This document shows, one piece after another, positions 1,448 through 57,073 of a stretch of DNA of 64,000 bases (its first letter is position 1; each line of letters opens with the position of its first letter). The stretch is from NCBI RefSeq assembly GCF_031769215.1, contig NW_026782264.1, positions 434,001 to 498,000 of the forward strand, given 5' to 3'. A program made the translations under genes and the position numbers. Origin of the DNA: Ylistrum balloti (taxonomy: Eukaryota). Under the pieces are notes generated by a model. That model ran no database searches. It saw nothing but the letters and a program-made list of their open reading frames with translations, and was not told the origin of the DNA.

Positions 1448-2774
1448 TCCTTAGCTTCGACAGATGCACAAGTTAGTTTGAACAAAGACTTTAATTTTGG
1501 CCACTACTCAGGACAAACAGATATAAGTAATCAGCGTATGGCACCTGCTGTAGTGTTAATTATCTTACAATGACGGGGTACGATACCAGGAAACAGAGTG
1601 CCGCGCTGATTAACAAAACAAACTGGTATTGTAGTATAGTCCTAATTATATTATCAGTGTCATGGATTCGATGTTGCCTGAGAAGAATCCCGTGTTCATG
1701 TCCGTGTCAAATGTATGCCTTCATCAGACCTAATAACCGATAACTCCAACATGAAACCTTCACATTAACTTAAAGACGAACTTTTAATTACTACAGAGAA
1801 AGGTCAAACACATCCTCCTGTTATTATAAATCACATGATCAGGGCTTAGAAGTATCCATAATTATGTTAAGGATATGTGTCAATGAGGGTGCTAGAATTC
1901 CCAAATCATATATAATTATCAGCTTATTCTCTCACACGTGAATCACCAGGGGAATATATATCCTGTGTAAATTTACAACATCAATGTAGACTACCAGATA
2001 GGTAACATGCCATATTTGGTGTTCAATTATGTCTGATGCAAATATTACAAGACATGCTACATGTTAGCCGCGTCTGTCGTTCCCAATAAAATGTACTGGG
2101 TTGTAGGTAATGCCCATAATCGTATTTGATTTAAGGGTATTCAGATGTTCTATCCTCTAAACATACATAAAGTACATGTAAGCCGTGAAGAGAGCAGCAT
2201 TGCATTAAGGTATCTATGTATCGTATCAAATTAAGCGATCACACCAAAGACATACAGCGGAATACAATTAAATGCTGTACACTTTAATGCAAAGTTTTAC
2301 AATAAGTGCAAATAATGGTTTAAACTACATTATAAAGCTGATTCGTCCCTACAGGATTTGTCAGTGATGTTACACGAGGAGCTGCCCGATTACAATAAGA
2401 TCTACACGACATCAATATCCAGATCAAAGTGGGAAGACACAGAGGCCCTAAAATTCAATGATTTTCATATGACTTTCCAAAACTGCATAACTTCGAACGT
2501 ATGTCAAAAAACCTATGTATGGACATATTCCAAACCACATCACTAATCTAATTAATACAATTTCAAAAATTAAAGTTGGAATTTATCAAGACAGAATATA
2601 AAGAACATAAAACAGGAACATACTGTAACTGTACTTTAAGCTTTAGCTTTGAGACAGCAGGTGGTTGACAATGCTGGTGGACTTTTAGTCCTGGTGGAGT
2701 GCCGTACCTGCATGCCACGTTTTAATTCAATCGAATATTGGTACGGTTCAGAATATACACATGGTCTTTTCTGG

Positions 2775-2975
2775 TATATGAAATAACGAAATGTATTTAA
2801 TCATAGGACTCCTGCACCACCCTGTCTAAATTTTTACTTTTCTTTTGATCTTCAGTCGCCTCCTAAGCTTCAACTTTTAAAGCACTTCGCATCACTGACG
2901 AGTCGTAGAAGTTCGAAACTACGGTATGATACAGTTTAATTCATTATTTGGCTATATGCTGTATCTAAGTCTAAA
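2775..2975 (+). mobile_element. ~200-bp hammerhead-bearing dispersed element (PLE pLTR- or retrozyme-like), degenerate copy
   Basis: GCATCA-CTGACGA-GTCG-TAGAA-GTTC-GAAA-CTACGG-TA-TGAT at 2889-2930. The upstream flank (TATGAAATAACGAAAT...AATTTTTACTTTTC) aligns with the reverse complement of 30378-30495. The downstream TATCTAAGTCTA matches the TATCTAACTCTA terminus of other copies. Confidence 0.8.
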
Positions 2976-7844: not shown

Positions 7845-7990
7845 TAGAGTTGGATAAAGTAGAGTCCACCCGTCGTACAGCTGTTTCGTGTTTCTATTAC
7901 TCGTCATTGATGCGACGAGCCTTAATTTTAGAGCCTTGGGGTGACGGAGGAAATTTCAAAATCTCGACGGGGAGTTGCACTAGTCCTATA
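7845..7990 (-). mobile_element. Degenerate copy of the hammerhead-bearing element
   Basis: Minus strand reads GCATCA-ATGACGA-GTAA-TAGAA-ACAC-GAAA-CAGCTG-TA-CGACG (7871-7913). Flanks are homologous to the other copies (CTCCCCGTC...CCAAGGCTC; TATCCAACTCTA). Core C3 is mutated and stem II is broken. Confidence 0.75.
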
Positions 7991-21302: not shown

Positions 21303-21345
21303 GCATCACTGATGAGTCCTATAAGAACGGAACAGTTACATAATG
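21303..21345 (+). ncRNA. Degenerate minimal hammerhead motif
   Basis: GCATCA-CTGATGA-GTCC-TATAA-GAAC-GGAA-CAGTTA-CA-TAATG. The GAAA is mutated to GGAA and the cleavage triplet is lost. Confidence 0.7.
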
Positions 21346-21462
21346 TGTTTTTCACTCATGTGTCGTTAGTTATTATTTTTTTATCGGAAAGTTATTTTAT
21401 ATTATATATAACATAGAATATCTCACCCCAGTGGCCATCTAGGTTTCGAACTTTGACCCTAA

Positions 21463-21545
21463 GCGTCCCTGAGGAATCCTAGAAGGACGAAACAGTTGTA
21501 TGATGCAGTAAATTAATTGTTTGACTCCAATGTATCTAACTCTAA
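21463..21545 (+). ncRNA. Minimal type I hammerhead motif with intact core and imperfect stems, plus the element 3' terminus
   Basis: GCGTCC-CTGAGGA-ATCC-TAGAA-GGAC-GAAA-CAGTTG-TA-TGATGC (21463-21506), followed by ...TATCTAACTCTA. Confidence 0.8.
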
Positions 21546-29545: not shown

Positions 29546-30197
29546 ATAACTTTATATTTGTTTTGTGGTCAATGTATGTGATGTATCTTTTGTAATATTT
29601 TGTGTCTTGATAAATTGGCAATTAACTTGTCTGTACTGTCGTTATTTCTTCATTGATGTTATACCCAACAAAGGATATTTATATACATAAAAATGGACCT
29701 TGTCCAGATAAACAAACAAATAACAATGCATTTATCAATGTTAACTTGACCTTGGTTTTTATCACTACATTATGCAACGTCATTTCCGGTTTATCGACAA
29801 TATTTGTATCGTACTACATAGCTGAGATGAGAGATGGGTCCCGCGGGACCTGTTATTGAAGTCATTACCCTGCTCAAACTAGTAAATACCTCATCTACAC
29901 AACAGGCAGGGAGCTGGCCGTCAGCTCTGTGAAGTCATTTTTGCTGGCCCAATCAGTCTTATTGTGTATACGTTGTATATTAAGACGTATTCATCGGTGA
30001 ATGCCTTATCAGTCAATTTCAAAATATTAACAAACCCTACAGATAGAGAAAGCTTCGGAGAAGGACTCTTGAAGTCTCTAGTATACATCTCGGAATCATA
30101 GATGTGTAGGATGTGCTAATTCTAAACGAATATTACAGAAATTGTACAAAAGACACACAAGTGAATAGTTCAGAGTTATATACAGTGAATTCATCAG

Positions 30198-30377
30198 CAT
30201 CATACAGCTGTTTCGTCCTTCTAAGACTCGTCAGTGATGTTACATCATACAGCTGTTTCGTCCTTCTAGGACTCGTTAGTGATGCTACATCACACAGCTG
30301 TTTCGTCCTTCTAGGACTCGTCAGTGATGTTACATCATACAGCTGTTTCGTCCTTCTAGGAATCGTCAGTGATGCTA
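30198..30377 (-). ncRNA. Head-to-tail array of four 45-nt minimal hammerhead ribozyme units
   Basis: Minus-strand consensus TAGCATCA-CTGACGA-GTCC-TAGAA-GGAC-GAAA-C-AGCT-G-TA|TGATG. It contains the canonical core CUGANGA...GAAA, stem I CAUCA/UGAUG, a 4-bp stem II, a palindromic stem III loop and a GUA site. Units start at 30198, 30243, 30288 and 30333. Confidence 0.92.
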
Positions 30378-30502
30378 AGGGCTTAAATTGGAGCCTTGGA
30401 GTCGACAAAAATCGAATTTAATCGAAGAAAAGTAAAAATGTAGACGGGGAGGTGTAGTAGCCCCATGATTAAATTTCGTTATTTTCATGTATCGGATATA
30501 TC

Positions 30503-30578
30503 GGCCTCGAACCCGCGACCAAGAGGTTGAGGGCGAGTGATAAAGACGGTCAGACGCCTTAACCAGTCGCCACCGCTT
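30503..30578 (-). mobile_element. tRNA-derived SINE head (Pol III A and B boxes)
   Basis: Minus strand reads GCGGTGGCGACTGGTTAAGGCGTCTGAC (A box)...CTTTATCACTCGCCCTCAACCTCTTGGTCGCGGGTTCGAGGCC (B box). Confidence 0.75.
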
Positions 30579-31512
30579 AGGACATGGACTTTTAGATCGC
30601 TTGATTCGCGATATCTTTAGTAGCGCCGATGGGTGTGTTTTGTTAATATGAACAAAAAAAAAAAAAAAAAAGAAAAAAAACCGTTCCACTAATCGCATTA
30701 CTATAACATAAAAATAGTTCTAGTCGAGGGCCTTGAACTCATGTTTCTTGCCCAAAACACTTTATGTAAAAACCTTCTATAAAGACATTAGATTTTTTAA
30801 TGATGTTTTGTCAATTGAGTGACCACATATTGTATTTATTGTGGAAATTTTTCACAAATTCAAAACGTAAAATACGCTTGTGTCGAGGGATTTATATGAC
30901 AGAGACAATGACTTGCAATATCGAAACCTGTACAGTTATAGTACAAAGAGGAAAAGGTTAACGTTTGGATGCACGTATAACTTGACAAGGCAGAAAGGAG
31001 ACGTTGGACAGCAATAATGGACATATCGCCTGAACCGGAACTACTATGGTTGTTTCTGTCAATGCCCGACCTTTATGCTTAACGGAATTAGTCTGAGAGG
31101 GTAATGTATCGTGGACAAATTGACAATAGACACGAGGTTTTTGTCGTGCCCAGAAGCTTTTCCTGGCGCTTTGTGAACACTTATAAATGTCTGCAACTAA
31201 AATGTTGTATGTTATCTCGGGATTTTCCAAGGTAATCCTCAAGTTGTTTTTGTGACGCTAAGTATCAGAGGTTTCTATTTCTTTCTGAAAACAGGATACA
31301 CATTGCTGGCTTACTTTTGAAAGTCTGCTTAGATCACTAAATTTCAAGACCACAAAAAGTGAAAGGATGATCAAACTAATTGGTCTTGATGGTAGACTTC
31401 CGTCGCTCGTTCCTTTATTGCCGACATTCCACATATAAATTTAAGTGAATCCAAACAATCTCATGTTCTCAAAACGTTTATCGGGTGAAAAGCAAGGAAA
31501 CAACCATATATA

Positions 31513-56702: not shown

Positions 56703-57073
56703 TAATTGTTTCGTACTAGATCCTGTCAGTGATATTACATCATACAGGTGTTTTACTCATCAGTGATGCTACATCATACAGATGTTTCACTCGTCGGTGG
56801 TGCTACATCATACATATGTTTTACTCATCAGTGATGCTACATCATACAGGTGTTTCGTACTAGATCCTGTCAGTGATGCTACATCATACAACTGTTTCGT
56901 CCTTTTAGGTCTCGTCAGTGATGCTACATCATAAAACTGTTTCGCCCTTCAAGGACTCGTTAGTGATGCTACATCATACAACTGTTTCGTCCTTCTAGGA
57001 CTCGTCAGTGATGCTACATCATACAGCTGTTTCGTCCTTCTAGGACTCGTCAGTGATGCTACATCATACAGGT
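56703..57073 (-). ncRNA. Head-to-tail array of hammerhead units: four 45-bp units, 42-bp and 34-bp deletion variants, and partial end units
   Basis: 45-bp units start at 56882, 56927, 56972 and 57017; the last is the perfect consensus TAGCATCACTGACGAGTCCTAGAAGGACGAAACAGCTGTATGATG on the minus strand. A 42-bp unit starts at 56840, and 34-bp units start at 56738, 56772 and 56806. Confidence 0.93.

What the first reader, a model, noticed from the sequence alone, without database searches (positions are those of the whole stretch)
30198..30377. Second hammerhead array: mutations look disruptive in the monomer reading but complement each other in the junction (type III) reading
SEEN: in the monomer (type I) reading only unit 1 (30198-30242, with a U-G wobble in stem II) is intact. 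Unit 2 has core CUAACGA (G5A), unit 3 has a GUG site, and unit 4 has a U10.1/C11.1 mismatch. In the junction reading, unit 4's GUA site plus unit 3's perfect core give a flawless 53-nt type III hammerhead (30346 to 30294, cut 30338|30337). Unit 2's GUA site plus unit 1's core give a second one (cut 30248|30247). The two killing changes, GUG and G5A, fall together in the single 3-to-2 junction. KNOWN: G5A and a G at position 17 abolish hammerhead cleavage. INFERENCE: the pattern hints that the junction ribozymes are the functional unit and that a 90-nt product (30337-30248) is released. With only four units this may be chance.
Basis: partly seen in the sequence, partly recalled or inferred. Interest (0 to 1): 0.8.

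Follow-up and report, generated by a model that had tools for sequence, protein, structure and literature searches.

The report
Decayed four-unit hammerhead ribozyme repeat
This is a four-copy, partly mutated stretch of a 45-base self-cutting-RNA (hammerhead) repeat found about 15,000 times in this bivalve genome; neighbouring copies can complete each other's fold, but the seemingly purposeful placing of its mutations is what chance gives.

Summary
On the minus strand, 30377-30198 holds four 45-nt hammerhead units. They carry U10.1/C11.1 (unit 4), a GUG site (unit 3), G5A (unit 2) and a U-G wobble (unit 1). Rfam scores the 4>3 and 2>1 junctions as type III hammerheads (50.3 and 47.1 bits) and the 3>2 junction as a wreck.

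The inter-unit fold is the only stable one. Helix III within a unit is 2 bp, whereas the ACAGCUGU palindromes of two units pair over 8 bp (-39 to -46 against -17 kcal/mol). This is the known double (dimeric) hammerhead.

The mutation pattern is not evidence for this. Two lethal changes share a junction by chance in 3 of 16 placements. Genome-wide, GUG+G5A occurs 17 times by junction, 14 by unit, 13 at lag -1 and 11 at lag +2. In 894 units (chains of three or more), lethal site and core changes show no lag preference. Palindrome-keeping double changes match the independence expectation (55 seen, 60 expected). Copies decay neutrally.

The array sits in a short dispersed element that often carries a single unit. 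Cleavage and expression are not shown. The scan had already noted this repeat family on other DNA.

The parts
30198..30377 (-). Four-unit array of the 45-nt hammerhead repeat. Units in my register: unit 4 30374-30330, unit 3 30329-30285, unit 2 30284-30240, unit 1 30239-30195.
30294..30346 (-). Junction (type III) hammerhead made of site 4 and core 3. It has no defect. Predicted cut 30338|30337.
   Evidence: Rfam RF00008, 50.3 bits; sequence
30204..30256 (-). Junction hammerhead made of site 2 and core 1, with a U.G pair in helix II. Predicted cut 30248|30247.
   Evidence: Rfam RF00008, 47.1 bits, 1.4 bits under the gathering score
30249..30301 (-). Dead junction: GUG site of unit 3 (G at 30293) with the G5A core of unit 2.
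   Evidence: partial match only, 18.7 bits
30248..30337 (-). The 90-nt RNA expected if sites 4 and 2 are cut. This is a prediction only.
   Evidence: inference
30378..30505 (-). Proximal part of the conserved left arm of the carrier element. It abuts the first unit after ...CCCUUAG.
   Evidence: alignment with 18 other loci
30141..30197 (-). Conserved right arm of the carrier element, ending in ...CTTTTGTACAAT.

Best explanation
The stretch is a short, partly decayed copy of a genome-wide 45-nt minisatellite whose unit is one minimal hammerhead ribozyme. It sits between the conserved left arm (about 200-250 nt) and right arm (about 100 nt) of a small non-autonomous dispersed element. Many copies of that element carry only one unit, so arrays are local expansions of that unit. 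If the minus strand is transcribed, a unit cannot close its own helix III (2 bp). Instead, the 8-nt palindromes ACAGCUGU of two units pair and form a double hammerhead with two composite active sites. The outer site joins the site of the 3' unit to the core of the 5' unit. In this array the GUA sites of units 4 and 2 can each be served by an intact core (3 or 1) in either pairing register. Site 3 (GUG) can never be cut. Site 1 has only damaged partner cores (2 or 4). The predicted products therefore have ends at 30338|30337 and 30248|30247 and include a 90-nt piece. The placing of the mutations is accidental: genomic copies of this family decay neutrally, and nothing selects individual junctions. 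SHOWN here: the anatomy, the Rfam matches, the fold energies, the genome-wide randomness of the changes and the carrier element. INFERRED: that the inter-unit fold is the catalytic one, the cut sites and the 90-nt product. Transcription of this locus is not shown.
For: Anatomy and Rfam matches. Fold energies, counting only the defined helices, are -17.1 kcal/mol for four monomers, -39.5 for two junction ribozymes, -44.1 for adjacent double hammerheads and -46.4 for nested ones. The unconstrained minimum-energy fold (-68.2, z = -4.7) is the nested double-hammerhead form. The consensus dimer folds as a double hammerhead and the consensus monomer does not fold as a hammerhead. The literature says hammerheads with a short palindromic helix III act as dimers in tandem repeats (PMC4209133; PMC7229834 for axolotl; review PMC6765202). 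Neutral decay is supported by five results. (1) The change rate is 4.3% at core positions and 5.1% elsewhere, with excess transitions at CpG positions. (2) In 894 units, lethal site plus lethal core co-occur in 19/793 pairs by junction, 24/894 by unit, 22/793 at lag -1 and 23/692 at lag +2; the bootstrap difference between junction and unit is -0.3% (95% CI -1.5 to +0.8). (3) Whole-genome exact counts of GUG+G5A are 17 of 5441 junction frames, 14 of 5158 unit frames, 13 at lag -1 and 11 at lag +2; Fisher p = 0.72. (4) GUG+G8A occurs in 15 arrays by junction and 11 by unit. (5) For the central helix III pair the counts are AGCT 6264, AACT 542, AGTT 705 and AATT 55, against 60 expected under independence. 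Dead variant units with shortened or mutated cores have still grown into long arrays, and the higher-order period varies from 1 to 4 units. The carrier arms and the single-unit copies are shown.
Against: No cleavage data exist. Helix I of the junction form is only 5 bp with a 3-nt loop, so the loop-loop contacts that make natural hammerheads fast at cellular Mg2+ may be missing. Penelope-type dimeric hammerheads cleave poorly in vitro (PMC4209133). Rfam accepts the unit (type I) permutation as readily as the junction one: 26 Hammerhead_1 against 3 Hammerhead_3 calls in 20 other loci. Homology models therefore do not choose between the readings. Four probable RNA runs hold the repeat unit but not the arms of this locus. 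Junction doubles are slightly, though not significantly, more numerous than unit doubles (27 against 19 arrays over the two mutation pairs). A weak effect therefore cannot be excluded.
Confidence: 0.72

Rival explanations
1. One reading: selection acts on junction ribozymes, so lethal changes accumulate together in junctions that are already dead. The live-dead-live pattern would then be a designed way to release a 90-nt RNA.
For: In this array both lethal changes fall in one junction. Genome-wide, junction doubles are nominally the most frequent class: 17 against 14, 13 and 11 cells, and 12 against 8 arrays.
Against: The differences are not significant (Fisher p = 0.72). They also go in the direction expected from the shorter span of the junction frame (5441 against 5158 frames). 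In the 894-unit sample the junction lag has the fewest double-lethal pairs (19/793). One array (L002) repeats a 90-nt block with A9U and GUG in the same unit, which kills every junction. There is no sparing of the core, no compensatory excess in helix III and no preferred two-unit period. The pattern has a chance probability of 0.19-0.25.
Confidence: 0.05
2. The monomer (type I) reading is the working form, perhaps helped by proteins. Only unit 1 would be active, cutting at 30203|30202.
For: Arrays start and end in register with whole type I units. Many copies of the carrier element hold a single unit. Rfam calls most units elsewhere as Hammerhead_1.
Against: Helix III is 2 bp with a 4-nt loop. 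The single-unit minimum-energy fold is not a hammerhead, and four monomers are about 22-29 kcal/mol less stable than the inter-unit folds. Published hammerheads of this build are inactive or weak as monomers (PMC4209133, PMC7229834).
Confidence: 0.1
3. The family is now inert DNA: a minisatellite spread and expanded at the DNA level inside a transposable element. The hammerhead would be a relic with no present role at the RNA level.
For: The decay is neutral at all positions. Catalytically dead variants have amplified. The higher-order periods vary, as expected from unequal exchange. The arms of this locus are absent from four probable RNA runs.
Against: The family consensus is still a flawless hammerhead after about 15,000 copies. 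Three arrays carry a compensated helix I pair, G-C to U-A. Contigs of probable RNA runs hold the unit at high summed depth, although DNA carry-over is not excluded.
Confidence: 0.13

Closest known systems
Double (dimeric) hammerheads: newt satellite 2, avocado sunblotch viroid, Penelope-like-element hammerheads (Forster et al. 1988; Cervera & de la Pena 2014, PMC4209133; Lunse et al. 2016, as cited in PMC6765202)
   Same: The hammerhead has a 1-2 bp helix III capped by a palindromic loop. Two copies pair through an extended helix III, and each active site is built from the site of one copy and the core of the other.
   Different: In those systems the two copies lie hundreds to thousands of nt apart or on separate molecules. 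Here they are directly adjacent, so the inner half closes into a compact 53-nt type III hammerhead that Rfam recognises as such.
Metazoan non-LTR retrozymes (Cervera & de la Pena 2020, PMC7229834)
   Same: These are tandem genomic repeats each carrying a type I hammerhead, found in molluscs among other animals. Some work as dimers.
   Different: Retrozyme units are about 170-400 nt with a non-ribozyme body and are shown to give linear and circular RNAs. Here the unit is 45 nt with no spacer, no RNA product is shown, and the array lies inside the arms of another element.
Schistosoma Sm-alpha / Sj-alpha SINE-like elements with a hammerhead (cited in PMC6765202)
   Same: They are short, dispersed, non-autonomous elements carrying one type I hammerhead.
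   Different: There the whole element of about 335 nt is the repeat unit. Here only the ribozyme is multiplied between fixed arms. A polymerase III head was not demonstrated here.
Helentron-associated elements carrying tandem repeats (Cg_HINE of the Pacific oyster, PMC7492417)
   Same: In a bivalve, conserved left and right arms of about 50-100+ nt flank a central tandem array of variable copy number, and copies are dispersed genome-wide in both orientations.
   Different: The described Cg_HINE monomers are 140-180 bp and are not ribozymes. The defining sub-terminal inverted repeats, the microsatellite and the TT insertion site were not tested here.

Membership tests
Hammerhead ribozyme (Rfam clan CL00010) | Conserved core CUGANGA ... 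GAAA and a cleavable NUH site | tested here: met
   Met for the pairs site 4 + core 3 and site 2 + core 1. Not met for site 3 (GUG) or core 2 (G5A).
Hammerhead ribozyme (Rfam clan CL00010) | Three helices around the core, scoring at or above the Rfam gathering score | tested here: met
   RF00008 scores 50.3 bits against a gathering score of 48.5 at 30345-30295. The second junction scores 47.1 bits, just below it. Elsewhere, units pass RF00163.
Hammerhead ribozyme (Rfam clan CL00010) | Self-cleavage at the predicted bond | not testable with these tools
   The runs are held as contigs only, so RNA ends cannot be seen.
Double / dimeric hammerhead | Unstable helix III (1-2 bp) with a palindromic loop | tested here: met
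   The A-U and C-G pairs plus the AGCU loop make the 8-nt palindrome ACAGCUGU.
Double / dimeric hammerhead | A second copy available to extend helix III, with the dimer fold favoured over the monomer | tested here: met
   The consensus dimer's minimum-energy fold is a double hammerhead. Energies are -44 to -46 kcal/mol against -17.
Double / dimeric hammerhead | Cleavage that depends on the dimer | not testable with these tools
   This needs an in vitro assay.
Metazoan non-LTR retrozyme | Tandem repeats that carry type I hammerheads | tested here: met
Metazoan non-LTR retrozyme | Unit of about 170-400 nt containing a non-ribozyme body | tested here: not met
   The unit is 45 nt and is all ribozyme. 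The size range comes from PMC7229834.
Metazoan non-LTR retrozyme | Expressed as linear and circular monomer RNAs | tested here: inconclusive
   Probable RNA runs hold the unit in contigs. No ends or circles can be read, and the arms of this locus are absent.
HINE-type (Helentron-associated) element carrying tandem repeats | Element-specific conserved left and right arms around a central array of variable length | tested here: met
HINE-type (Helentron-associated) element carrying tandem repeats | Sub-terminal inverted repeats, a 3' palindrome, and insertion at TT without target duplication | tested here: inconclusive
   Only a TTGTACAA palindrome at the right end was seen. The termini were not defined and empty sites were not examined.

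The most novel reading that the evidence does not exclude
Arrays of this family are transcribed and cut through inter-unit double hammerheads into RNAs of 45 x n nt. Uncleavable GUG sites and dead cores would set n (here n = 2, giving 90 nt). The 5'-OH and 2',3'-cyclic-phosphate ends would then be joined by tRNA ligase into the smallest ribozyme-derived RNA circles known in animals.
Probability: 0.08. Interest if true: 0.75.

Novelty: new variant of a known kind. Interest (0 to 1): 0.33.

Why it matters
The family is the most compact hammerhead repeat I could find described: 45 nt with no spacer, about 15,000 units, carried between the arms of a small dispersed element. It shows how a type I ribozyme, once duplicated head to tail, automatically yields type III ribozymes at the junctions. 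That makes it a convenient natural test bed for the double-hammerhead model. For this particular finding the useful result is negative. The apparent complementation of mutations is chance, and genomic copies decay neutrally. Mutation patterns within single arrays should therefore not be read as evidence for which fold is functional.

Tried and rejected
I replaced this with exact whole-genome pattern counts.

(2) I looked for RNA evidence. All 24 runs offered are held as contigs and none is on record as RNA. Laying four of them showed the unit but no flanks and no usable ends.

(3) I tested helix I and helix III covariation by unit against covariation by junction. The only clear compensated pair (1.2/2.2, G-C to U-A, in arrays L046-L048) is carried by whole arrays and does not discriminate.

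(4) I considered using Rfam as an arbiter between the readings and rejected it, because both permutations pass.

(5) By eye, 30510-30600 (minus strand) looks tRNA-like. ARAGORN and Rfam find nothing, so I make no claim of a polymerase III head.

(6) I searched the window for other minisatellites sharing the same arms. At up to 3 mismatches only this element matched. Later, single-unit copies with more diverged arms turned up.

(7) Literature searches for hammerhead with bivalve, satellite DNA, Crassostrea or scallop found no description of this repeat. Lunse et al. 2016 is not held in the library.

Full report
WHAT IS THERE. On the minus strand, 30377-30198 holds four head-to-tail 45-nt units. 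I index a unit from the C of CAUCAC. Positions 0-4 are the 5' strand of helix I. Positions 5-11 are CUGANGA. Positions 12-15 and 21-24 form helix II. Positions 25-28 are GAAA. Positions 28-35 are the palindrome ACAGCUGU. Position 36 is nucleotide 17, the cleavage site. Positions 37-41 are the 3' strand of helix I, and 42-44 are a UAA or UAG linker. Units start at 30374, 30329, 30284 and 30239.

Unit 4 has U10.1 opposite C11.1. Unit 3 has a GUG site (G at 30293). Unit 2 has G5A. Unit 1 has a U.G pair in helix II. Rfam finds Hammerhead_3 at 30345-30295 (50.3 bits, gathering score 48.5) and at 30255-30205 (47.1 bits). The 3>2 junction gives only a partial 18.7-bit match.

THE FAMILY AND ITS CARRIER. 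The stretch is one copy of a very large family. The 31-nt core pattern matches 15,125 places in the 648-Mb genome at up to 2 mismatches, and the reversed control matches none. A BLAST of the four units found arrays on many contigs. I collected 990 units in 71 arrays. Loci L002-L030 were picked by BLAST and so are biased towards the query. Loci L031-L059 were taken in contig order and are unbiased.

On the ribozyme strand, arrays are always preceded by a conserved left arm and followed by a conserved right arm. The left arm is about 200-250 nt and ends in ...GGCCCTTAG. The right arm is about 100 nt and ends in ...CTTTTGTACAAT, at 30165-30141 in the window. Arrays begin and end in the linker, so they consist of whole type I units. 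Many copies of the element hold a single unit between the same arms, and five such copies lie in this window. Arrays are therefore local expansions of one ribozyme inside a small non-autonomous element.

The class of the element is open. Its build recalls the repeat-carrying Helentron-associated elements of oysters (PMC7492417) and the SINE-like hammerhead elements of schistosomes (cited in PMC6765202). I did not test the defining terminal features of either.

WHICH FOLD. Within a unit, helix III is only A-U and C-G closed by AGCU. ViennaRNA folds a single consensus unit into something that is not a hammerhead. It folds a consensus dimer into a double hammerhead. The 221-nt transcript of this locus folds into nested double hammerheads (-68.2 kcal/mol, z = -4.7).

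Counting only the defined helices gives these energies:
- four monomer hammerheads: -17.1 kcal/mol
- two adjacent double hammerheads [4.3][2.1]: -44.1
- the nested register 4[3.2]1: -46.4

This is the double hammerhead of Forster et al. 1988. Cervera & de la Pena (PMC4209133) describe it as the rule for metazoan type I hammerheads with a short palindromic helix III in tandem repeats, and it was shown experimentally for axolotl repeats (PMC7229834).

Working through both registers gives the following. Sites 4 and 2 (both GUA) always have an intact partner core (3 or 1). Site 3 can never be cut. Site 1 has only core 2 (G5A) or core 4 (mismatch) as a partner. The predicted cuts at 30338|30337 and 30248|30247 and the 90-nt product therefore follow from any inter-unit model. 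They separate these models only from the monomer model.

Rfam cannot arbitrate. In 20 other loci it units as Hammerhead_1 and 3 junctions as Hammerhead_3.

IS THE MUTATION PATTERN EVIDENCE? No, for six reasons.

(a) Chance. One dead site and one dead core placed at random in four units share a junction in 3/16 of cases and share a unit in 4/16. With the third change added, at least two junctions stay flawless in 25% of placements. In the sample, 55.6% of all junction pairs and 54.5% of all units carry neither a lethal core change nor a lethal site change. Two good junctions out of three is therefore ordinary.

(b) Sample test. In 894 units in register, a lethal site change and a lethal core change co-occur in 19/793 pairs at the junction lag. 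The figures are 24/894 within a unit, 22/793 at lag -1 and 23/692 at lag +2. The bootstrap difference between junction and unit is -0.3% (95% CI -1.5 to +0.8) (a broader definition gives the same picture).

GUG then G5A across a junction occurs 17 times in 12 arrays among 5441 frames. G5A and GUG in one unit occur 14 times in 8 arrays among 5158 frames. Lag -1 gives 13 and lag +2 gives 11. Fisher p = 0.72. For GUG with G8A the counts are 47 cells in 15 arrays by junction and 28 cells in 11 arrays by unit. Fourteen of the junction cells come from one array of 44-nt units, which the unit frame cannot match. The small nominal excess by junction is not significant. It is expected from the shorter span of the junction frame.

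(d) No compensation. For the central pair of the inter-unit helix III, the counts are AGCT 6264, AACT 542, AGTT 705 and AATT 55. Independence predicts 60 for the palindrome-keeping double.

(e) No sparing of the core. The change rate is 4.3% at core positions and 5.1% elsewhere, with excess transitions at the CpG positions.

(f) Counter-examples. Locus L002 repeats a 90-nt block with A9U and GUG in the same unit, which kills every junction. Variants with deleted helix II or dead cores have grown into long arrays. The best higher-order period is 1, 2, 3 or 4 units in 20, 11, 8 and 5 arrays respectively.

Genomic copies thus decay neutrally and expand at the DNA level.

EXPRESSION. No run on offer is on record as RNA and all are held as contigs. 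In four probable RNA runs, hundreds of contigs hold the unit, but the arms of this locus have no coverage and ends cannot be read. Transcription and cleavage at this locus are therefore not shown. The 5-bp helix I with a 3-nt loop may lack the loop-loop contacts needed for fast cleavage in cells. This last point is an inference from general hammerhead knowledge.

VERDICT. The structural idea is right but already known: it is the dimeric hammerhead. The mutational argument is chance.

A spacer-less 45-nt hammerhead minisatellite inside a dispersed element appears undescribed in the literature I could search. It is a new variant of a known kind. Other agents of this scan had already noted the family on other DNA of this genome and on this window.

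Noticed in passing
window 2890-2934 (+), 21304-21348 (+), 21464-21508 (+), 7868-7912 (-), 2325-2369 (-): Five further copies of the same carrier element lie in the window. Each has a single, variously decayed hammerhead unit between recognisable left and right arms. The one-unit state is therefore common and probably ancestral.
   Followed up: partly
window 30510-30600 (-): Where other copies continue the left arm, this copy has a stretch that looks tRNA-like by eye (D-arm-like and T-arm-like boxes). ARAGORN and Rfam report nothing, so this is unconfirmed.
   Followed up: partly
L046, L047, L048 (all on contig C18): Three arrays carry a compensated helix I pair (1.2/2.2, G-C changed to U-A) throughout. 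This is real covariation for helix I, but it does not tell unit pairing from junction pairing.
   Followed up: partly
window 56726-56855 (-); L031 1-800; L044 2000-4200: Sub-families with shortened or catalytically dead units (34-42 nt, with helix II deleted or A6G/G12A cores) have expanded into long arrays. Array growth therefore does not need an active ribozyme.
   Followed up: partly
loose ends at 30242, 30287 and 30332: Contigs of probable RNA runs often carry units with three extra bases (CCC on the ribozyme strand) in the helix I loop or linker. These make a 48-nt variant not present in this array.
   Followed up: no
L032 2377-3142 (-) and 3723-3947 (+); L051: Pairs of hammerhead arrays lie in opposite orientation within a few hundred bases of each other.
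   Followed up: no
whole window: The window is unusually rich in unrelated minisatellites: 36 TRF rows with periods of 15-72 nt, several of them over 1 kb. At up to 3 mismatches none shares the arms of the hammerhead element.
   Followed up: partly
G000:C19:1174784-1176130 (-): An array alternates G5A units with units that read GAAG instead of GAAA (A15.1G). Every core is dead, yet the two-unit block was amplified many times.
   Followed up: no
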